From NCBI RefSeq assembly GCF_963676685.1, contig NC_092354.1, positions 8,494,001 to 8,558,000 on the forward strand: a stretch of DNA of 64,000 nucleotides, written 5' to 3'. Positions 1,348 to 64,000 of the stretch are shown in pieces. Numbering within the stretch: position 1 is the first letter of the stretch; every line of letters starts with the position of its first letter. A program made the translations under genes and the position numbers. The notes below the pieces were generated by a model. That model did no database searches. It saw only the letters and a list, made by a program, of their open reading frames with translations, and had not been told where the DNA came from. The stretch is from Mytilus edulis. Its lineage: Eukaryota.

Positions 1348-3195
1348 CTTCTCTTCTCTTCTCTTCTCTTCTATTTATTCGATAGGACACATTTCCACAC
1401 CGTCAAGTTTTAAATGTGTCTAATGTAATTTAATTTTGTTTTAATCTTAAATGAGGTCTTAAATTATTGATGTTATTGCATTTGTCTATCGGTACGGGTT
1501 CTCCTTAATTTGCACACAGCAATAGTAAAAATAAAAATAAGAATGGTTATGAATAAAGGAGGAATAAAGGTAAAACAATTAGACTGCCAAAATCATCCGT
1601 GAGCTAATATAAAAAAAAAAAGCCATTGAAAATTTGGCGGAAAATCATTCTCTCTATATTTTTCATACATATAACAAATTTTGCACCTTTTTTCTTTCAA
1701 AAACTTTAAAAAAAATAACATAAATTTTTAAATAGAACTTTGTGTAATAATATTATGAAAATATATAAAAGTAGGGGTTAGCGGGCAAAATATTTTGGGA
1801 AAGTACATAAAAAAAACCCAGAGGATTTCGAATATCTTGCAAAAATCCTAAAAACAACATGAATAAACATCATAAGACGCTTAAAAAACGTTTTACTCAC
1901 TTACAAACGATTTTTATGAATTAATGTATAAATACGAATAAGCATAGAGTATTACATGGTATTCATTTGTTCCGCTCTTTAACGAATGGCCAGTTTAGGT
2001 GCATGTATAATGAACCTATCTGGTTTTCCAGATTTTTGTATACTAGTATACATAATTGTTTATTTATGATTACGATAAAATAGCTTGTGTTTCTATCATA
2101 ATATGTTTACTGTCTCAGACGCGAGATGTGGTAATGTTGTTATAATTTTTACTACAAGCTTTAAGTTTTCATCGCAGATAAAGATCAGTAATTTTACATT
2201 TACAATGATTCGTTCGTTCACGAGAAACTATATTATCTCTGACATATATCAATACAATAACTAGTAATCGACTTGTCAATTGGTTTTACATTTTACATCA
2301 TCTGAAAGGTGTATGCACTACACCACTCCTTTATTCAGCTACACAAGAAAGATCCCATGTGGTTTGATTCGTCAACTGCCCGGAAACGTTTAATATTAAA
2401 TGATATCCGTGTTATAAAATGAATGAAAGCTAGTGTATATATGAGTGATTTACTATTTTCGACTTTAAAACTATTTCCATTAAACAACCATCTAGTATGA
2501 TGCATAATACATGTAATACTGTGCTAGCTATCAAACACATACAAAACAAAAGCGTAAGAAAACTAACTATTATTTACGGTATTAAACTTTTTTCAGAGAA
2601 ATTTTATCTATATAGTATCATGGTAAAAAAGCATAATTACTTTTGGGATGTTTTATAGTAATTAGTCTGATGTGTGACATGGCACAGTATTTAAAAAAAA
2701 TGAACAGAACGACTGATGAAGATATTACAATATGTAAAGAATAAATATATGACGACATGTTTTTTTTCATAACTATTACTTTTATGTATGATTAGTGTTA
2801 TAAAAATAGTTATTCTAAGTTAAATGTTGTTGGTTTTTTTTTTTTTTTTGCGTAAATTTAACATAACAAATCACTGCATTGTGTGCAAAGTGGCGCAAAA
2901 GCATTACAATAAAGCGGTCGTAAGGATTTACAGGCTACCCGTAGGTCTTTAACAATGAGAAAAAAATATCACATACTATACTCATGGTCGATTCAACAAA
3001 ACTTAATCTTCTTTTCTGTATTTTGAAAATATATATATTGAATAAAATTAAGGGATATCGAGATGAAAAATATGATCGAATGGAGCTATAGATTGTTTAA
3101 AAATAATTTAGATTTAAAAACTCGTCGGAAACGCTTTACTTCATTCAAAAAACAAATGCATACATTTTACGAACTGGACTCGACGATCTTTCAAA

Positions 3196-3953
3196 TCGTT
3201 CCCACAAGATAGCTATCTCGTTCCCTCAAGATACTATGTTGTTCCCACAAAATAAATATCTCGTTCCCTAAAGATGCTATGTCGTTCCCTCAAGATGTTA
3301 TGTTGTTCCCCCAAGATAGTCATCTTGTTCCCTCAAGATGATATGTCGTTCCCTCAAGATATCATGTCGTTCCCTCAAGATATTATGTCGTTCCCTCAAG
3401 AAACGATGTTTTCCCCTCAAGATGATATGTCGTTCCCTCAAGATGCTATGTTGTTCCCTCAAGATAGTTATCTCGTTCCCTCAACATAGCAATATCAATA
3501 CAATGTTAAAACTATGTTGAGGGAACAACATAGTATTTTGAGGAAACGACATAATAACTTGAGGGAACGACATAACATCTTGAGGGAACAACATAGTATC
3601 TTGAGGGAACGACATAGCACCTTGAGGAAACAACATAAAATCTTGAAGGAACGACATAGTATCTTGAGGGAACGACATAACATCTTGAGGGAACAACATA
3701 GTATCTTGAGGGAACGACGTAGCATCTTGAGGGAACAACATTACATCTTGAAGGAACGACAAAGTATCTTGAGGGAACGACATAATATCTTGAGGGAAGA
3801 ACATATTATCTTGAGGGAACGAGATAACTATCTTGTGGGGACGACATATTATCTTAAGGGAACGACATAGCATCTTGAGGGAACGAGATAGCTATCTTGT
3901 GGGAAGGACATATCATCTTGAAGGAACGACATAGTATCTTGAAGGAACAACAT
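3196..3953. repeat. Inverted (foldback) array of a 21-bp minisatellite
   Basis: Unit ~TGTCGTTCCCTCAAGATAnnA. About 14 units at 3196-3489, a 22-nt spacer at 3490-3511, then about 21 units in the opposite orientation at 3512-3953. Confidence 0.95.
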
Positions 3954-4898
3954 ATTTTTTTTTTCTTTCATAGACGCATTCTGCCACCGTAGTTTCATGA
4001 CCAAACTACAATCTGAATGGTTTTTTTAATTGATATACATATTTAGACTAACTTAAAGACCTTATTGCTAAACAATTGATAATTCAATAAAAGGCTATTG
4101 TTACAGTTTTCAGTCATGATTTACCTCAAAATTTAGTGAGTCAGGACTCTAAATTTTTGTTGAATAATAAATGTTTGAATACACTATATATATTTCTATC
4201 TTTATAAGCCTCTTTTCGTGCTTTTAGTTTGTTAAAGGAGAAATAGTGAACAAAATTAATAAGAACAAATAACACATTATACGTTTTTAGTAAGTTTAGG
4301 TAATTTTTTTTAACATGATTATACTTTTGTATACCCTCATGGTATATAATGCTACTTTGATAAAATATAATCTCCAAAGTCATGAAATAGTAAATACAGA
4401 AATGTTTTGATCCTTTTGTTAATTCGGTATTTTACAGATAAATGCATGGATTCAATTTTACAGTCAACATTACGCTTTCAAAATGACAGCAGAAATCACT
4501 GTTCCGTTGAAGCCTTTGCGATTTTTTTTTTATTTTCAAGCGTCATAAGTTTATTTGTCTCTATAGATTTGACCACGATGTTTATCTAGAAACAATATTT
4601 AACTTATTAAAACTGCAAGTATTCTGCATGTATGATTTATTTATCATGCCATAGTTTATTAATTTAGAAATATTTACATAGCCATGCAGTAGTGAACAGA
4701 CAATTTGTGTAGTAATCAATCCTCCTGAGAAAATAAAATGACCAACGATTGCATGATAGTTATTAAGTAATGTACGAGATAACTAATGACCGCAAAATCT
4801 GAAGTTTACCCCAACAAATTCCCATCTGCTAATTCCTCAATGTCTTGTTTCATGATTTACATGAACGATCAGATTCAGTATAATTATTTCCGGAGTTA

Positions 4899-5222
4899 CT
4901 AACATGACTAACATGTTTAACCCGCCACATTATTTATGTGTGTGCCTGTCCCAAGTCAGGAGCCTGTAATTCAGTGGTTGTCGTTTGTTTATGTGTTACA
5001 TAATTTTTTCGTTCATTTTTTGACATAAATAAGGCCGTTAGTTTTCTCGTTTGAATTGTTTTACATTGTCTTATCGGGGCCTTTTATAGCTGACTATACG
5101 GTATGGGCTTTGTTCATTGTTGAAGGCCGTACGGTGACCTATAGTTGTTAATGTTTGGGTCATTTTGGTATTTTGTGGATAGTTGTGTCATTGGTAATCA
5201 TACCACATCTTCTTTTTTTATA
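4899..5222 (+). mobile_element. Non-autonomous interspersed repeat containing the 3' half of the twister-like motif
   Basis: ACATGTTTAACCCGCC...GCCTGTCCCAAGTCAGGAGCCT is shared with the Penelope 3' ends at 25531-25580 and 63496-63544. Downstream parts recur inverted at ~10650-10745 and ~52270-52382. Confidence 0.75.
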
Positions 5223-23211: not shown

Positions 23212-23947
23212 TTGATACTACAATAAATAGAGCCAACAATGTATATTGTAAACTTACCTTTGTCTTAGTATTGTCATCAGTACATTCTGTTGTTACTTTT
23301 CTTTTCTTCTTTTGTGATGGTGTCTTCTGTGGTGGTGTTTTTCCATTACTTTCATTGATCTTCTTTCTTTTAGGAGTTTCACTTTTTGGAATGGTCAAGT
23401 TATATTTTGTACCATTTAGATTTCCATTGGTTTGCTTGTATGAACTATAAGTTGTTTGAAGCCTTTTGAAATTACATCTAGCTCCTTTTTGTCCTTTTCA
23501 TCTGTTAAAAACATAAAATTTGGGTGAATACTGGTTGTCGAATTCCCATATGGAATTTACTGACCCCATATATACCCATTACGTCACTGGCACCCTATGT
23601 AATTTAGACTAGTGACCTATAAAAATGAGCAAGTCTTCAATACAGGTAGCATTAACATGATTAAGAAACTACTTCCTATGATCCTACAAAAACAGATGCC
23701 AAAAATGACAACTTGTTAGATTTAAATATGTTTTATGAATTTATTTCAATTTATCATCACTTTTTTCGTCTGTTGAAACCTTTAAGATTTTTTCTCAGTA
23801 CTGTTTTTGTTTTTCCAAAGGCACGTAACACCACTACTAACCATGTCTGAAATAATCCCCGCCTCCTTATTACCTTATATGGAATATAAAGAGACGTAAC
23901 TTTACTACTAACCGTATATGAAATAAGCCCCGTCACCCAACTAACCT

Positions 23948-25182
23948 TCAAGCCATTGTTCAACTACTAAATTGTCTATTCTTCTTACCAGCACACTTGG
24001 TACAATTAAAAACCTTATAATAAATTGTTCAAATAAGGCCTTCGAAAATAGTGGAATAAATTACTTCTGGAGTGTCAAGAACTCGTTGGAAGTACTTGAT
24101 AAATTGCATGCTTATATTGGTGATTTTGAATCTATTCAAAGTTTTGATTTTTCTACCCTGTATCCACATTGCCTCACATTCTCATTAAGAAAAAATTCAC
24201 ACACCTAATTAAATGGGCATTCAAAAAATCAGAATGTGAATATATATGTTCAAACTCTTTTAGGTCATTTTTTAGTAGCAATAAACAAAAAAACTATGTT
24301 AATTGGACATGCTTTGATACTATATATGCCCTTGAATTTTTACTAGATAACATTTTTGTTCGCTTTGGGGATTCCGTATATCGTCAGATTATCGGAATTC
24401 CAATGGGGACTAACTGTGCACCACTTATTGCGGACCTCTTTTTGTATTGTTATGAGTTACAATTTATGACAAAAATAAGCAAAGACCCATCAAAACAACA
24501 TCTGATAAACAAATTTAATAATACTTTTAGATATTTGGATGATATTTTGGCTCTCAATAATGACGACTTCAGTATGTATATTAATGAAATTTATCCGGCT
24601 GAACTTACTTTAAATAAAGCTAATACTAACAATGACCACTGCCCTTTCCTCGATCTTGATATCTATATCACTAACGGAAAGCTGAATACTAAAATTTATG
24701 ATAAAAGGGATGATTTTTCATTTCCTATCGTTAATTATCCGTTTTTAGATGGTGACGTTCCCTTGTCACCATCTTACGGTGTTTATATTTCTCAACTTGT
24801 ACGATTCGCTCGTGTATGTAACAATGTTTTAGATTTTAACGAGAGAAATTTATGTATTACTGAAAAATTATTACACCAGGGTTTTCGATATCACAAACTA
24901 GTCAAAACATTTACTAAATTTTATCATCGGTATAAAGACATCATTCGTAAATATAGCTCAACATGCAGACTTCTTATACGTTCAGGTATTTCACATCCAA
25001 TTTTTTATGGAAATATTCTTTATAAAGCACAAAGGTGTCAGTATTCACCTCAGAAACTTAAAAAACCTTTGAATAGACTTATTAAGAAGGGATATAATTA
25101 CGATACTGTTGTCAAGTCATTAAAGATTGCATATTTTGGCGTTAATATTGAGTCACTGATAAGGTCTTTGCGTCGGAACTAA
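23948..25182 (+). pseudogene. Penelope-like reverse transcriptase (frameshift near 24163), with no C-terminal endonuclease
   Basis: SFDFSTLY(T)TLPH, QIIGIPMGTNCAPLIADLFL, FRYLDD, FLDLDI, YDKRDDFSFPIVNYPFLDGDVP..SYGVYISQLVRFARVC. ORFs 23972-24208 and 24169-25182 join via a 1-nt deletion. Ends TAA. Confidence 0.92.
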
Positions 25183-25232
25183 ACACATTTATTCTAAAAA
25201 CAGTTGTTGGCATGACACGGGTTATGTTCTTC

Positions 25233-25299
25233 TCATATATGTTATGATGGTATGATACTAAACCCCTAACGGGAAGGATTGTGCCTGATGTACATATGA
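25233..25299 (+). promoter_or_regulatory. Type II SECIS element (predicted)
   Basis: AUGAU core (25244-25248), helix II GGUAUGAUaCU/AGgAUUGUGCC, unpaired AAA (25260-25262), mini-stem CCC-cuaac-GGG, 3' UGAU (25286-25289), helix I UCAUAU/AUAUGA. Lies ~50 nt after the stop codon. Confidence 0.85.
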
Positions 25300-25494
25300 T
25301 GAAATCATAATCTTTCAGTCAGTTTAATTGAAGTCTGGAGCTGGCATGTCAGTTAACTGCTAGTAGTCTGTTGTTATTTATGTATTATTGTCATTTTGTT
25401 TATTTTCTTTGGTTACATCTTCTGACATCAGACTCGGACTTCTCTTGAACTGAATTTTAATGTGCGTATTGTTATGCGTTTACTTTTCTACATT

Positions 25495-25585
25495 GGTTAG
25501 AGGTATAGGGGGAGGGTTGAGATCTCACAAACATGTTTAACCCCGCCGCATTTTTGCGCCTGTCCCAAGTCAGGAGCCTCTGGCC
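25495..25585 (+). ncRNA. Twister ribozyme, P5-type permutation (predicted)
   Basis: P5 GGUUAGAGGU/GCCUCUGGCC; P2 GGGG/CCCC; GAGGG; U|AA; GCC; P3 GCA-uuuu-UGC; G; P4 CCUG-UCCCAAGU-CAGG; A. The order and conserved nucleotides match the twister consensus, but the P1 region is atypical. Confidence 0.8.
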
Positions 25586-26578
25586 TTTGTTAGTCTTGTA
25601 TAATTTTAATTTTAGTTTCTTGTGTACAATTTGGAAATTAGTATGGCGTTCATTATCACTGAACTAGTATATATTTGTTTAGGGGCCAGTTGAAGGACGC
25701 CTCCGGGTGCGGGAATTTCTCGCTACATTGAAGACCTGTTGGTGACCTTCTGCTGTTGTTTTTTATTTGGTCGGGTTGTTGTCTCTTTGACACATTCCCC
25801 ATTTCCATTCTCAATTTTATTATATTAAATATACACTATTTCCACGAGGACGATTTTAACCAATCATGTTCCTAGATATGTATAGGAGGTAAGATACTGT
25901 ACATGTTATGTCACACTTTTCATTGAAAACACAAACACAGTACAAATCATATCACTTTTGGGAACCTGATCAGAACCTTATTATGTTTGATCTTATGATT
26001 GCAGCTGGTTGTCGTTTGTCCATGTGGTTCACAAGTTTTTAATGTAGATCGAATCCGTCATTAAATGATTCTCCTTAATATTCAAATAGCTATGCAAATT
26101 ATCTAGTTCTATATTCTATCGTGACAAATTAACGGTAGCTAATAAAATATATGTTGCACGAAGCTACATAAAATATTCTCGGGTACATCTACCATACTTT
26201 GATATGTAATAACCAAACTTTACGAGGAGAACGAAGTCATACAATAGAAATTTTGCTAACTTTATCATTTACATGTGAAAATATTAATAATATTACAAAG
26301 AAGTTGATTTACATTAAATAGGTAATATGTTGTGTCCACAATAGATGAAAACAATAATATACAGGTAATGTAAATTCGGGACACACAATATCATACGTCT
26401 GCAATTTTTAAGTTTCCGTGCAAATCCTCCTGGCCAATACAAAATATGAATTGACCGCGAAATCAAAATGATTAACAAATACGTAATTTTAACAAAGAAT
26501 ATTCATGAACTAAATATAAAAAGTAAAGTGAAGATGATTTCGATTAAAATAATTATGTTCCTTTATCAAAATTCAAGT

Positions 26579-58544: not shown

Positions 58545-59879
58545 CTGAAAAAAAAATGTAACAAAGTTATAAGAAATTCACAAACCAAACAGCTGCAATA
58601 GTCAGCATACAACAAGTCTTGAAAGTTTTCCTATCATCTGTAACCGTGTACATAACGTCAGGTGCTTGTGACCATGTGACTGAAAAATATGTGTTCATGT
58701 ATATAATAATATATATGTCGTCTGTCCAATAGTCCAATTGTGCCATTCTTAATCTTATTTGCTACTGCTGGGTTACTACTTTCCTTTTTGAGTATGCTAA
58801 ATCTTTCCAAATTGCATTTAAAAAGCCATTTATTGCACAAAACATTTCACAAAACTTAAGGTACAAACATTCATGAGTTTCTTGCTATATAGCTGTTAAT
58901 TTTCCTTTTTAAGTGCTTTAAACTAATCAATTATGGACCCTCCATTGACAATAATAGTGCTATGGTGTGTGACTGGTGTAATCAATTAGGCTCTGTCAAT
59001 GAACAATAAACAGCTGCGCCATGAGCGCATGATACGCCCGACGTCTTGTGTACAGTATACAGATCTTCAGATTAATATAACAAAGACCTGTGTAAAGTTT
59101 GAAGCAATAATCAGAAATCGTTTTTGAGATATGTTGCGACATGTAAAACATCCTCCCCCTTTTTTACAAAATACTCAATAACCCTCTTGGAAGCTCTCTA
59201 AACCTCCTGAACTTACATCTTGTACCAAAAAAACATAATCCACTTTAGCCAAGCTTGCACATATTTATTGTATAAAAAAAAGAATTGAATGCTTCCAACA
59301 CAATTGTCAAATAACACCATCGAACACGTCTCCCTTTTGACAAACTCGATGAATGCGTCTCTATGTGATATTGTTTAGTACTGGCATGATGAAAAACGGT
59401 GATCTTGGGTGTTACATTGTCACTTTAAAAACAATCCTTCATCAGATTAATTCTGTTTCACTGGCTAATGATTTCCTGCTGACAGTTGTTTTACAATATC
59501 TTGCCTCAATGGAGTAGAAAAAAACATTATCAAGATGTTTAGGGTTTTGTATATCGTAAGGTTCATGGTATCGTTAAGCGTTTTATTTGTCGTACGGTTC
59601 ATGGTATGGTTTAGCGTTTCGTATATCGTATGATATGTGATATCGTTTAGCGTTTCATCAACCGTATGGTACATCGTGTTGTTAAGTGTCTAATATATAT
59701 GTTAGGGTTTTATTTTAGAAGTTATTTCAGTTTAAACTTAATTAGGAAACACAATGCGGAAAAACATGTATTGGAATTTTAAATGACTTTAGTTCCCAGA
59801 CTGATACTTTAACAACAGAAAAAAAAAACAACCTTATACTTTATACCCTAACACGGATGCTGAAGTAAATGCCACACTG

Positions 59880-60777
59880 CCATTTTTAACTGTTGACGAT
59901 CTCAATAGTGAGGAAGTTACATTTTATACAAGTTTACACAATAAGCCGACATTTTATTTATTGTATGAACATATAATGTCAAATATAAAAATTGTTGAGC
60001 CACAGACTGGAGGCAGACCTCAAAAACTAAGAGGTGTGGAAGAATTATTTATGGCTTTAATGCGGCTGCGTCTGGGTTTACATACTCAGGACTTGGCACG
60101 TCGTTTTAATATTTATGTTTCTACTTGTAGTAAAATATTTAACACATGGATTGATTTAATGTATGAACATTAACATTTTCTTGTTGCCTGGCCTGAAACT
60201 GTCAAATGTAATATGCCTGGCAGTTTTAAAAGGAGGTATCCAAATTGTGTAATTGTAGATTGATTGATTGATTGTTGGTTGCTTAACGTCCAGTGGCAAA
60301 TATTTCATGCATATTCAGGACGAGAACAAGTTCACAATAAATACAATAGGTAGGTTGTTGTAATAGAGGCCATCTAGGATGATGGTCGGGGAAATTTGGA
60401 CTGCCACTGGAAAATGAGGGTATATTGGATAGGGACAGAAATTTTGCCTTGCAACAGGCCACCTACGGACCCCTCAAAGAGTTGTTGCAAGGGTTCTTAA
60501 CGTGCAATGAGCGTGGCACTCTCTTTACACGAGGCATCGGATTTAACGTCCCCTTCTGACGGACGTGACTGCGAACTTGATACATCCCGCACAGCCAAAC
60601 GGACGCCCCACTTCAGCAAGCGTTTTACTGCCGGTCGGGAGAAGACCAAGTGACCATATTTCTATACCCCAGTCACCCTTGGGGTGTGTAATTGTAGATT
60701 GTACTGCAATATTCACAGGAACGCAACAGTTATTATCTAATAAAGGAAGAATGTACTCGACTACAAGTCACATATGA
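59880..60777 (+). pseudogene. ISL2EU/Harbinger-type transposase remnant split by a SINE
   Basis: FYTSL...GRPQKLRGVEELFMALMRLRLGL..DLARRFNI..STCSKIFNTWI...WP...MPGSFKRRYPNC|VIVDCT (HTH_Tnp_4 plus the start of DDE_Tnp_4). Confidence 0.85.
60263..60684 (-). mobile_element. 430-bp SINE, full length, young
   Basis: Perfect 17-bp TSD TGTGTAATTGTAGATTG at 60246-60262 and 60685-60701. Confidence 0.95.
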
Positions 60778-61984
60778 CATCATAAATTAATGAACTCGAT
60801 TGATTAATGTCGTCTATGTCGCTAAATTCCATTTGTGAACAGTCACGAATAGTTGAATATGCAGAGGGTTTATGGTCGAGCATTACAGGCTAAACAGTAT
60901 CACTGTCATCTTCGTCGATAGTATAAACGGTTTCAGATCTGCTGGATTACCTTAAACCGAGGATATTTTACTGTCCTGCCTTGATATCTCCCGCCTTACA
61001 GTTAGTTATGAGTCTTATGAAGACGAAACGCTCGTCTGGCGTACTAAATTATAATCCTGGTACCTTTGATAACTATTAACCAGTAATGATTCAACTAGAT
61101 GTGATTTATAACTGTTCTGATTTATAGAATTTATTCCATGATGATATAGGTTGTATACATATGTTTTTTTGGTAAACTACTGAAATACAAATAAAGGATC
61201 ATTCTTTTAGCGTTCTAAAAAGAATAATAAGATCAGTTAATTTTCTTTCCTATTACTCTTCAAATATGTATATCTTGAATCACTAACCTGAATAAGGCGT
61301 CGTAAACGTTCTCTTGTTCTGAGGAAATGTTTTATATAAAAATATTATTCAGCAATTGTTTTGTGTTAGTTCCGTTTATGATTCTAAAATGATCCTTTAA
61401 CAATGTCCATGTACTTTGAAATATATTTCTGCAACATTTAAATGTTTCCGGTTTCTGCAGCATATAAGTAAATGTGTTAAAAGCTCATCTTACGGCTACC
61501 TGAAAAGCGCTTATACCCGACCACGTTAAGCGGAATGTATGGGGCAAAACTGTTTGAACAAATTCGCGTATCCGGCGAAACTTGCTTTGTAATAAGCAAC
61601 CGAAAGAATCGGATTCCCTTTATCATTCGGTAGTATAATTATTCTATTTGGTAGTCCCAGATAATCAAAATTCAGTTATACTTGATTTTCCGTCGAAATA
61701 CACTTTTTCCATAACATAACATGGAGCAAGTTTTGTAATAATGCTTCCTTATTATGTACTTGTAGTATTCGGAGGGTTAGTTTTAGGTAATCAGACAAAG
61801 CATCTAGAGATGTCCGAAGCACTTCCCAGAAACCATTCTCTTCCGGTTGAACTACTGGCTTAATGCAGACGTCTATTATAACTAGAAGAGCAAGGAACGA
61901 CTATCCAAGGTATATATCGGTCTTGAGATATACTCGGGATCACAACATTGACCCTGCTCGCAGTTCACACCAACAAGAGTAGCT

Positions 61985-62200
61985 AATTTAATTCCCAAAT
62001 ATGCCTTCATTTCATGTAATGTCCATCCATTTTCCTTTGTTCTGCACAGGGTCACTTTCAATTTTGGTAGTTGCATTTTCTGGGTCCATTCACAAATTTT
62101 ATTAAACAGTTCATCAGTAAGGAGAACTGAAAATAGTTCAAGGCTGTATTACTTCTATCCAGCACTCGACGTGGACCAGATATGCCAGTCTATTACAAGT
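61985..62200 (-). pseudogene. piggyBac (PGBD-like) transposase N-terminal remnant
   Basis: GPRRVLDRSNTALNYFQ/LLTDELFNKICEWT/ATTK...KWMDIT/EMKAYLGI, read across frameshifts. Confidence 0.7.
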
Positions 62201-62581: not shown

Positions 62582-62971
62582 ACTGACTTATTGATTGTTG
62601 GTTGCTTTCAAACTCAACTGCGTAGTCATTATCTGGACCTTGATTTTCCGCCACTGTTAGAGCGGAGCTTGGGATTGCTGAATTGTGTATTTCAACTACA
62701 ACTTCTAGGTTTGTTAAATCTTTTCTGGGGAAGCAATTGGCGTCACATTTATGGTCAGTTGAAGAACTGGACTAGAGTTGTTTGGAACACTTTCAAAACT
62801 CATTCAAAACGGTGTTCATAATTTTTTGATCGGCCATTGTTGTTCCTGTCAAATGCTTCTAAAGAGCTAAAAGTTTCTTTGGGAATGGCTAATGTATTCC
62901 AGTGGTGAATTCCTGTTGATTTTAACCCCGCTACTATGGTAACTCTTGTAAAGGCCTTCTCATATGCCTGT

Positions 62972-63130
62972 CGCACATTTTCTTTAAATTTTGAAACTGA
63001 TATAACTTGAAAAACAAACAGTATTATTTATTTACTCACATGAAACAAACCGGGGTTTGGTATTCAGTACGTAGGAGAAACTGGACGATATTTATCTAAA
63101 CGCACTCAAGAACATCTGTATGGTTTTAAT
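62972..63130 (+). pseudogene. GIY-YIG endonuclease fragment with two in-frame UGA (putative selenocysteine) codons
   Basis: RTFSLNFETDIT-U-KTNSIIYLLT-U-NKPGFGIQYVGETGRYLSKRTQEHLY, with TGA at 63008-63010 and 63041-63043. Confidence 0.85.
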
Positions 63131-63197
63131 CTTTGCATCGGAACTAAACACATTTATTCTAAAAACAGTTGTTGGCATGACACGGTTTATGTTCTTC

Positions 63198-63264
63198 TCA
63201 TATATGTTATGATGGTATGTTACTAAACCCCTAACGGGAAGGATTGTGCCTGATGTTCATATGA
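63198..63264 (+). promoter_or_regulatory. SECIS element, second copy
   Basis: Same fold as 25233-25299 with one extra helix II mismatch; core and AAA intact. Confidence 0.8.
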
Positions 63265-63459
63265 TGAAATCATAATCTTTTAGTCAGTTTAATTGAAGTC
63301 TGGAGCTGGTATGTCAGTTAACTGCTAGTAGTCTGTTTTTATTTATGTATTATTGTCATTTTGTTTATTTTCTTTGGTTACATCTTCTGACATCAGACTC
63401 GGACTTCTCTTGAACTGAATTTTAATGTGCGTATTGTTATGTGTTTACTTTTCTACATT

Positions 63460-63550
63460 GGTTAGAGTTATAGGGGGAGGGTTGAGATCTCACAAACATG
63501 TTTAACCCCGCCGCATTTTTGCGCCTGTCCCAAGTCAGGAGCCTCTGGCC
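63460..63550 (+). ncRNA. Twister ribozyme (P5-type), second copy
   Basis: Core identical to 25495-25585 with one P5 mismatch; predicted cut between 63503 and 63504. Confidence 0.78.
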
Positions 63551-64000
63551 TTTGTTAGTCTTGTATTATTTTAATTTTAGTTTCTTGTGTACAATTTGGA
63601 AATTAGTATGGCGTTCATTATCACTGGACTAGTATATATTTGTTTAGGGGCCAGCTGAAGGACGCCTCCGGGTGCGGGAATTTCTCGCTACATTGAAGAC
63701 CTGTTGGTGACCCTCTGCTGTTGTTTTTTATTTGGTCGGGTTGTTGTCTCTTTGACACATTCCCCATTTTCATTCTCAATTTTACTACTTGATTAAGGGA
63801 CTGATTCCTTGTTGACTGCTTCTAGCAGTCCCAATGTCTCGTATGAGTGATGTGAATTCCAAATTAAAACCAGTGTTTTAGAAACACGTTTTTAAACCAA
63901 TCCTCTCCCAGCTGATCATCCATCCATGCTTCTGGATCGAAACGCCACTTGGCGTATTCTGGTCCTTTATGCATATTGTATGATCTTTGGTAATGCGGTG

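What the first reader, a model, noticed from the sequence alone, without database searches (positions are those of the whole stretch)
62972..63130. GIY-YIG endonuclease with UGA codons at conserved cysteines: a selenoprotein transposon
Seen: the frame reads IT-U-KTNSIIYLLT-U-NKPG(F)GIQYVGETGRYLSKRTQEH. Both stops are TGA and fall where Penelope endonucleases have Cys (C.S.NVIY.I.C..C..QYVGET...L..R..EH). The third Cys position is TTT, one change from TGT. A SECIS follows on the same strand. Established (from memory): some Naiad elements were reported to encode selenoproteins. Two independent Cys-to-TGA nonsense changes plus a SECIS would be unlikely by chance.
Basis: partly seen in the sequence, partly recalled or inferred. 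Interest (0 to 1): 0.9.

Follow-up and report, generated by a model that had tools for sequence, protein, structure and literature searches.

The report
Dead fragment of selenocysteine-coding retrotransposon
This is a broken 815-base remnant, in a blue mussel genome, of a Penelope-like "Naiad" jumping gene whose intact copies read four UGA stop codons as selenocysteine in place of conserved cysteines. Such elements were already described in clams and spiders, so this adds mussels rather than a new principle.

Summary
Window 62972-63130 (+) reads a GIY-YIG endonuclease N-terminus with two in-frame TGA codons at conserved Cys positions. TTT stands at a third Cys position, where all 41 other sampled copies have TGT. 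A SECIS-like hairpin lies at 63199-63263.

The local piece is dead. It holds element nt 538-697 joined directly to the last 655 nt, with 2.6 kb deleted, so the endonuclease-SECIS adjacency is a deletion artefact.

It is a 3,967-nt Naiad-type Penelope-like element in Mytilus edulis, with about 560 endonuclease-bearing copies and about 7,200 SECIS copies. Seven of 41 sampled copies keep a 1006-1008-codon frame that is open except for four TGA codons, all at conserved Cys sites. The SECIS lies 51 nt after the TAA stop.

Supporting evidence:
- dN/dS of 0.10-0.13 downstream of every TGA, against a sister lineage.
- Cys and TGA alternate at the same sites across relatives of 40-92% identity.
- The SECIS shows compensatory base changes across lineages.
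- tRNA-Sec genes are present in the host.
- RNA-seq reads cover the whole element.

Selenoprotein-coding Naiads were published for clams and spiders (Craig et al. 2021). This scan already reached the same reading on other DNA of this genome (s1-830508). Verdict: new member of a known kind.

The parts
62970..63129 (+). Endonuclease fragment of the Naiad element (element nt 538-697). It covers the end of the spacer after the CX4UxxC motif, the GIY and YIG motifs, and the start of the catalytic core.
   Evidence: 98.75% identical to 40 scored genomic copies over exactly this span; element coordinates.
63008..63010 (+). In-frame TGA (site U2), at the conserved Cys just before the GIY motif.
   Evidence: TGA in 41/41 sampled copies and 99/100 listed genome-wide matches. 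Cys in distant Naiads.
63041..63043 (+). In-frame TGA (site U3), at the first Cys of the CCHH zinc-finger-like motif inside the GIY-YIG core.
   Evidence: TGA in 41/41 sampled copies and 95/100 listed matches; the rest are TGC x3, TGT x1, TGG x1. Cys in L089, L093 and in all relatives of 34% identity or less.
63056..63058 (+). TTT (Phe) at the second Cys of CCHH. This is a copy-specific mutation of TGT.
   Evidence: 63057 is T here and G in all 29 compared copies; TGT in 41/41.
63129..63130 (+). Internal deletion junction: element nt 697 joined to nt 3312, with 2,614 nt missing and no clear microhomology.
63130..63784 (+). Last 655 nt of the element: the final five sense codons and TAA stop of the family ORF (63130-63147, out of frame with the endonuclease piece here), then the 3' UTR.
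   Evidence: 97.6% identical to element nt 3312-3966. The 3' end is shared by all copies, after which the flanks diverge.
63199..63263 (+). SECIS-like hairpin (AUGA ... AAA ... UGAU), 51 nt after the family's TAA stop.
   Evidence: Rfam SECIS_1 at 30 bits here and 31-34.3 bits in other copies. Homologous hairpins right after the ORF in diverged relatives, with 12 of 16 pairs showing compensatory changes.
63460..63550 (+). Twister-like motif in the 3' UTR. It is not part of the claim and is listed only because it lies inside the element.
   Evidence: Rfam twister-P1 gives only a 13.3-bit local match, E 8.3, against a gathering score of 67.2. By eye it fits a P5-permuted twister.
23946..25820 (+). 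Second copy of the same family in the window. It is 5'-truncated (element nt 2092-3967, 98.2% identical), with its SECIS at 25234-25298.

Best explanation
Window 62970-63784 is a dead copy of a roughly 4-kb Naiad-type Penelope-like retrotransposon of Mytilus edulis. It is 5'-truncated, internally deleted, and carries a Cys-to-Phe change.

In intact copies a single ORF of 1,002 codons runs from Met to TAA. It encodes an N-terminal GIY-YIG endonuclease, a KR-rich and CxC linker, and a reverse transcriptase. It contains four UGA codons:
- the second Cys of the CX4CxxC motif;
- the Cys before GIY;
- the first Cys of CCHH;
- the Cys 8 residues after the DKA motif.

These are most likely read as selenocysteine with the help of a SECIS hairpin 51 nt after the TAA stop and the host's Sec machinery.

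Shown here: the anatomy, fixation of TGA in the family, purifying selection beyond the TGAs, Cys/TGA alternation among relatives, a covarying SECIS, host tRNA-Sec genes, and transcription.

Inferred: that Sec is actually inserted, and that the full-length protein is made.
For: Anatomy:
- A full element is 3,967 nt and is preceded by a partial tandem copy (pseudo-LTR). One locus holds 2.5 tandem units.
- The window copy is element nt 538-697 plus 3312-3966.

ORF:
- 7 of 41 sampled copies keep a 1006-1008-codon frame free of TAA/TAG, with exactly 4 TGA. The sites are given.
- A six-frame genome search shows dozens more copies with open frames of 1008 or 1041 codons and '4 TGA' inside.

Fixation of TGA:
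- 34/35, 41/41, 41/41 and 39/39 at the four sites in sampled copies.
- About 560 endonuclease copies genome-wide, 99/100 and 95/100 of those listed being TGA.

Selection:
- Against a sister lineage (L074, 92% aa identity, dS about 0.3), dN/dS is 0.13 between U3 and U4 and 0.10 after U4. All four TGA are kept.
- They are also kept in L077 (58% identity) and L085 (42%).

Cys/Sec exchange:
- Metagenomic relatives show every mixture of Cys and TGA at these sites. Relatives of 34% identity or less are all-Cys, with no TGA in 1000-1200-codon ORFs.
- ENA gene calls of the same family show W exactly at the TGA sites.

SECIS:
- Present in all copies tested, at 30-34 bits.
- Found at the homologous place right after the ORF in TGA-bearing relatives.
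- 12 of 16 pairs are compensatory, with invariant ATGA/AAA/GAT.

Host:
- 5 tRNA-Sec loci at 77 bits or more.

RNA:
- Raw RNA-seq reads cover the whole element. One run is about 4:1 sense-biased over the ORF.

Literature:
- The same three clam sites and the SECIS position were described by Craig et al. 2021 (PMC8557442).
Against: - No protein-level evidence exists: no mass spectrometry, 75Se labelling or ribosome profiling.
- The SECIS scores stay just under Rfam's gathering score (30-34.3 against 35). Its thermodynamic fold is unremarkable (z -0.56).
- Decoding four UGA in one mRNA is expected to be inefficient.
- One TGA-rich relative (L077) has no detectable SECIS. A SECIS-like hit also occurs inside the coding region of a TGA-free lineage (L113/L115), so the hairpin model is not perfectly specific.
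- The RNA-seq signal cannot separate autonomous transcripts from read-through or intronic copies. A few percent of DNA carry-over could explain part of the depth.
- Pfam does not recognise the family's own endonuclease.
Confidence: 0.82

Rival explanations
1. The two TGA codons are ordinary nonsense mutations in a decayed pseudogene copy, and the nearby SECIS-like hairpin is a chance match.
For: The window copy is indeed dead: it is truncated, deleted and carries a Cys-to-Phe change. The SECIS hit is below Rfam's gathering score.
Against: - TGA is the family state in essentially all copies.
- Frames of 1008 and 1041 codons stay open except for these TGAs in many copies.
- dN/dS is about 0.1 downstream of them.
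- The same sites are TGA in lineages of only 42-58% identity.
- The SECIS covaries across lineages.
Confidence: 0.02
2. The UGA codons are translated, but not as selenocysteine. Examples are near-cognate read-through as Trp, Cys or Arg, or Cys loaded on tRNA-Sec. The conserved 3' hairpin would then serve another role, such as RT recognition of the 3' end.
For: Sec insertion was not observed. Four UGA per ORF would be costly. The 3' region is shared with far more abundant repeats (3' depth is 10-50 times higher; about 7,245 hairpin copies against about 560 endonuclease copies). That fits a role in template recognition.
Against: - UGA alternates specifically with Cys codons at zinc-finger-like and catalytic-region positions, never at other residues. 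That is the signature of Cys/Sec exchange.
- The hairpin keeps the SECIS-defining AUGA/AA/GA nucleotides invariant while its stems covary.
- It is found after the ORF in TGA-bearing lineages and was not found there in all-Cys lineages.
Confidence: 0.1
3. UGA terminates translation. The element makes only short N-terminal peptides, and the RT is produced separately by internal initiation or from a processed RNA.
For: Craig et al. note that endonuclease and RT are often detached by frameshifts in the A-rich linker. Many database gene calls start right after a TGA.
Against: - Three TGAs fall within 43 codons inside the endonuclease fold itself, so termination would leave no functional endonuclease.
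- Yet the inter-TGA segment is 100% conserved at the protein level against a lineage with dS of about 0.24.
- The fourth TGA sits inside the RT N-terminal DKA region.
- The database starts after a TGA are artefacts of prokaryote-style gene calling.
Confidence: 0.05

Closest known systems
Naiad_Mmer and Naiad_Scon, the selenoprotein-coding Naiad families of the clams Mercenaria mercenaria and Sinonovacula constricta (Craig et al. 2021, PMC8557442)
   Same: - N-terminal GIY-YIG endonuclease plus RT in one ORF.
- UGA at the Cys before GIY-YIG, at the first Cys of CCHH, and at the Cys 8 aa after DKA.
- SECIS just after the stop codon.
- Bivalve host.
- Pseudo-LTR tandems and 5' truncation.

   Different: - The host is a mussel, Mytilus edulis. 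The paper curated a Mytilus Naiad but did not report Sec in it.
- A fourth UGA lies at the second Cys of the CX4CxxC motif. The paper reports that site only for a spider family.
- The SECIS is 51 nt after the stop, rather than 1-21 nt.
- Sequence identity to the published families could not be measured, because no reference sequence was available to the tools.
Naiad_Sdum and Naiad_Smim, the Stegodyphus spider Naiads (same paper)
   Same: Multiple UGA codons at conserved Cys positions, including the CX2-5CxxC motif, plus a SECIS.
   Different: The authors consider them an independent origin. They have no UGA in CCHH, and chelicerate Naiads lack the IFD.
Canonical EN+ Penelope-like elements (Penelope/Poseidon, Neptune, Nematis)
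   Same: GIY-YIG endonuclease with a CCHH motif, telomerase-like RT, pseudo-LTRs and 5' truncation.
   Different: Their endonuclease is C-terminal, they carry hammerhead ribozymes, and they have Cys rather than Sec. Here no Rfam hammerhead reaches threshold.
Selenoprotein P, a multi-Sec host selenoprotein that is very Sec-rich in bivalves
   Same: Several UGA codons decoded from one mRNA by 3' UTR SECIS elements.
   Different: It is an unrelated protein, a host gene rather than a mobile element, and usually has two SECIS elements.

Membership tests
Naiad clade of Penelope-like elements | GIY-YIG endonuclease N-terminal to the RT in a single ORF | tested here: met
   One frame of 1008 codons holds the endonuclease motifs at ORF residues 55-125 and the RT motifs from about residue 515 onward.
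Naiad clade of Penelope-like elements | CX2-5CxxC and CCHH zinc-finger-like motifs in the endonuclease | tested here: met
   Both motifs are present, as C-x4-U-x2-C and U-x4-C followed by His residues, with U (TGA) where relatives have Cys.
Naiad clade of Penelope-like elements | KR-rich block, CxC linker motif, and DKA in place of DKG | tested here: met
   All three are seen in the ORF. CxC and DKA are invariant or nearly invariant in alignment A1.
Naiad clade of Penelope-like elements | Pseudo-LTR partial tandems, frequent 5' truncation, body of 3.4-4.4 kb | tested here: met
   Upstream partial copies of variable length end at the same 3' terminus. The element is 3,967 nt. A truncated copy lies at 23946-25820. 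3'-end copies outnumber 5' copies about 13:1.
Naiad clade of Penelope-like elements | No canonical hammerhead ribozyme | tested here: met
   No Rfam hammerhead match in the element at E<=1, and none above the gathering score in the whole window. This rests on Rfam models only.
Naiad clade of Penelope-like elements | IFD insertion between RT3 and RT4, and phylogenetic placement with published Naiads | not tested
   The published consensus proteins were not available by reference. Only homologues without names were found.
Eukaryotic selenoprotein gene | In-frame UGA aligned with Cys, or with UGA, in homologues | tested here: met
   All four sites alternate Cys and TGA across relatives.
Eukaryotic selenoprotein gene | SECIS element in the 3' UTR | tested here: inconclusive
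   Rfam SECIS_1 gives 30-34.3 bits, just under the gathering score of 35. The invariant AUGA/AAA/GA nucleotides, the position after the stop, and compensatory changes in 12 of 16 pairs across lineages support it. SECISearch3 was not available.
Eukaryotic selenoprotein gene | Host has the Sec-decoding machinery | tested here: met
   Five tRNA-Sec loci at 77-79.6 bits against a cut-off of 47. SBP2, EFSec and SPS2 were not searched.
Eukaryotic selenoprotein gene | Coding constraint continues downstream of the UGA | tested here: met
   dN/dS is 0.13 (U3-U4) and 0.10 (after U4). The 40 codons between U1 and U3 are identical at the protein level at dS 0.24.
Eukaryotic selenoprotein gene | Selenocysteine actually incorporated | not testable with these tools
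   This needs 75Se labelling, mass spectrometry or ribosome profiling.
GIY-YIG catalytic domain (Pfam PF01541) | Match to the Pfam model above the gathering score | tested here: inconclusive
   The family's own endonuclease gives no Pfam hit at E<=0.1, tested as P0191, a database read-through with W at the TGA sites. It aligns at E 3e-21 with P0243, whose corresponding region passes PF01541 at 25.5 bits against 22.6.
Twister ribozyme (considered for window 63460-63550) | Match to an Rfam twister model | tested here: not met
   Only a 13.3-bit local match to twister-P1, E 8.3, against a gathering score of 67.2. Twister-P5 gave no better match.

The most novel reading that the evidence does not exclude
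Sec-coding Naiads may be a large, old radiation of marine-invertebrate retrotransposons rather than four odd families. They switch freely between Cys and Sec at five or more sites, including the CxC motif, which the paper's account of its four families does not list as a Sec site. By 5'-truncated insertion they have scattered over 7,000 SECIS hairpins through the mussel genome. Some of these may have been captured by host 3' UTRs to create new host selenoproteins, or may make transposition depend on selenium supply.
Probability: 0.12. Interest if true: 0.75.

Novelty: new member of a known kind. Interest (0 to 1): 0.38.

Why it matters
- **Host range.** It extends the only known selenoprotein-coding transposons from clams and spiders to mussels.
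- **Stronger case for decoding.** It supplies evidence the original description did not spell out: fixation of TGA across hundreds of copies, dN/dS of about 0.1 beyond the UGAs, a Cys/Sec mosaic across many lineages, and covariation in the SECIS.
- **Annotation.** Standard gene callers split these ORFs or translate UGA as Trp. Bivalve transposon and gene annotations will therefore misread them.
- **Raw material for new genes.** About 7,200 dispersed SECIS copies could seed new host selenoproteins.
- **This locus.** The window fragment itself has no function.

Tried and rejected
The DNA and source organisms of the database homologues could not be read that way.
- **The listing of cluster members** gave no names or accessions.
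The sibling family with the 1041-codon frame could not be fetched, and its sites were not read directly.
- **Pfam** on the ORF pieces found nothing useful.
- **Single-sequence folding of the SECIS** is uninformative, z -0.56.
It was split in two.
- **L115 in the SECIS seed.** I included it, then judged its hit a probable false positive: it lies inside the N-terminal coding region of an ORF with no TGA. I repeated the covariation count without it.
- **Rfam twister-P1 hit in relative L084** (24 bits): rejected on inspection, as it lacks the conserved twister nucleotides.
- **RNA-seq read ends** show no pile-up at the predicted twister cleavage site.
- **Read-through protein.** The pieces between the TGAs were searched apart. 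A read-through with X at each TGA was used only in a local tblastn.

Full report
**1. Observation**

- The two stops are TGA, at 63008-63010 and 63041-63043.
- The codon at 63056-63058 is TTT.
- Rfam's SECIS_1 model matches 63199-63263 on the same strand at 30 bits (E 0.0046). That is just under the gathering score of 35.

**2. What the local piece is**

A DNA search of the window's own genome found 913 candidates. All 40 that were scored match only window 62970-63129, at 99% identity.

In those copies the window's next segment (63130-63784, which holds the SECIS) does not follow the endonuclease piece. It lies upstream as part of a preceding partial tandem copy, or about 2.6 kb downstream.

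A full element is 3,967 nt. It is typically preceded by a 5'-truncated tandem copy, the pseudo-LTR hallmark of Penelope-like elements. One locus holds 2.5 tandem units.

The window copy is therefore element nt 538-697 joined directly to nt 3312-3966, with 2,614 nt missing and no clear microhomology at the junction. It differs from 29 compared copies at only two bases. One of them turns the family's TGT (Cys) into TTT.

The fragment is dead, and it sits among other decayed transposon remnants. A second copy of the same family lies at 23946-25820. It is 5'-truncated and has its own SECIS at 25234-25298.

**3. The family's gene**

Of 41 sampled copies, seven keep a frame of 1006-1008 codons free of TAA/TAG that contains exactly four TGA. 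The others are broken by private frameshifts or stops.

From the first Met the ORF has 1,002 codons. The four TGA fall at:
- the second Cys of a C-x4-C-x2-C motif;
- the Cys just before the GIY motif;
- the first Cys of the CCHH motif inside the GIY-YIG core;
- the Cys eight residues after the DKA motif of the RT.

The TAA stop is followed 51 nt later by the SECIS-like hairpin.

TGA is the state in 34/35, 41/41, 41/41 and 39/39 sampled copies. Genome-wide pattern searches find about 560 copies of each endonuclease site. Of the first 100 listed, 99 and 95 are TGA.

A six-frame search of the genome shows dozens of further copies with open frames of 1008 or 1041 codons and '4 TGA' as their only internal stops. 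At least two sibling families therefore share the trait.

**4. Is UGA decoded?**

- **Selection.** I compared one copy with a sister lineage recovered from a metagenome contig (L074, 92% amino-acid identity, dS about 0.3). dN/dS is 0.13 between the third and fourth TGA and 0.10 after the fourth. The 40 codons between the first and third TGA are identical at the protein level. All four TGA are retained there, and also in lineages of 58% and 42% identity.
- **Cys/Sec exchange.** In 77 related metagenomic loci, each site is TGA in some lineages and Cys in others. The patterns seen across the four sites include UUUU, CUUU, CCUU and CCCU, and one further locus has TGA at the second site, Cys at the third and TGA at the fourth. 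Relatives of 34% identity or less have Cys throughout and no TGA at all in ORFs of 1000-1200 codons.
- **Gene-call artefact.** Database proteins of the same family show W precisely at the TGA sites. This is evidently a TGA=Trp gene call.
- **SECIS.** The hairpin scores 30-34.3 bits in every copy tested. Rfam, and a covariance model built here, find the homologous hairpin on the sense strand at or near the end of the ORF in TGA-bearing relatives. With a probable false positive removed, 12 of 16 predicted pairs show compensatory changes, while ATGA, AAA and GAT are invariant. All-Cys relatives gave no such hit after their ORFs.
- **Host.** The genome has five tRNA-Sec loci at 77 bits or more.
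- **RNA.** Raw RNA-seq reads of the host species cover the whole element. One run shows a roughly fourfold excess of the sense orientation over the ORF. The 3' end is 10-50 times deeper, as expected from truncated copies and related repeats.

None of this shows selenium in the protein. That step is inferred.

**5. Host**

A homologue search returned a protein that NCBI names as from Mytilus edulis. Its contig has exactly the length of this genome's contig C2, 108,102,362 nt. Three coded species labels hold the element in DNA runs.

**6. Comparison with what is known**

Craig, Yushenova, Rodriguez and Arkhipova (2021, PMC8557442) defined the Naiad clade. They reported four Naiad families, in two clams and two spiders, with three or four in-frame UGA at conserved cysteines and a SECIS just after the stop. 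They called these the first selenoprotein-coding transposons.

Three of the four sites found here are exactly the clam sites. The fourth, the second Cys of CX2-5CxxC, is described there only for a spider family. The defining Naiad features that could be tested are met (see the membership table).

The paper curated a Mytilus Naiad but did not report Sec in mussels. No later paper in the searchable library does either.

An earlier follow-up in this scan reached the same conclusion on another piece of this genome (s1-830508). I reached mine independently and tested it.

**7. Weak points**

- The SECIS is sub-threshold on Rfam.
- One TGA-rich relative (L077) has no detectable SECIS.
- A SECIS-like hit occurs in the coding region of a TGA-free lineage (L113/L115).
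- The RNA evidence cannot prove autonomous transcription.
- Pfam does not recognise the family's own endonuclease, although it aligns at E 3e-21 with a relative that passes the GIY-YIG model.
The 1041-codon sibling family was therefore not read at the DNA level.

**8. Verdict**

The local sequence is a non-functional fragment. The phenomenon is published, and this is a new host and a new site combination. I rate it as a new member of a known kind, of moderate interest.

Noticed in passing
window 63460-63550 (also 25495-25585; a related core at window 4907-4965): The element's 3' UTR carries a motif that by eye fits a circularly permuted (P5-open) twister ribozyme. It has a P5 stem (GGUUAGAG/CUCUGGCC), GAGGG, UAA, a CCCC/GGGG P2, GCC, a small P3 hairpin, and a P4 with a UCCCAAGU loop. 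A palindrome (GAGAUCUC) stands where P1 should be. Rfam gives only a 13.3-bit local twister-P1 match, and RNA-seq shows no read-end pile-up at the predicted cleavage site. The core recurs in another repeat at window 4907-4965, with a differently paired P3 but without the upstream GAGGG half. First readers flagged it many times in this genome.
   Followed up: partly
L077:1619, L079:2012, L084:1796, L085:1835, L086:1620, L097:1438, L083:943, L101:311: In several diverged Naiad lineages from metagenome contigs, a further in-frame TGA replaces the first Cys of the CxC linker motif (U-D-C), always 138 codons before the DKA+8 site. The account of Craig et al. 2021 does not list this Sec position. 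The window's own family has Cys there.
   Followed up: partly
genome-wide (G000); pattern from window 63208-63254: The SECIS core occurs about 7,245 times in the genome at 3 or fewer mismatches, against about 560 copies of the endonuclease segment. Truncated Naiad tails have thus scattered thousands of SECIS hairpins. Whether any lies in a host 3' UTR was not examined.
   Followed up: no
proteins P0191, P0203, P0234, and P0085/P0093/P0094/P0096/P0111: Public (ENA) gene calls of Naiad ORFs show Trp at the conserved Cys/TGA positions. For P0191 the family's DNA has TGA there. These proteins were evidently translated with a TGA=Trp code, an annotation artefact that hides Sec-coding transposons.
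   Followed up: partly
L113:109-189 and L115:470-547: A SECIS-like hairpin (Rfam 30 bits in L115) lies inside the N-terminal coding region of a Naiad lineage whose ORF of about 1,000 codons has no TGA at all. It is either a chance match conserved because it is coding, or a relic. Unexplained.
   Followed up: partly
G000:C10:14401393-14442259 and C945: A tandem array of about 45 units, spaced about 895 nt apart, each scores 45.9 bits against tRNA-Sec. That is just under the cut-off, so these are probably another tRNA type in a tandem repeat.
   Followed up: no
window 59805-60170 (+), 61885-62148 (-), 62803-63027 (-): Open stretches flanking the fragment look, from memory and without a test, like remnants of DNA transposases (Harbinger/P-like, piggyBac-like, pogo-like). 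The Naiad fragment therefore sits in a transposon-rich patch, not in an obvious host exon.
   Followed up: no
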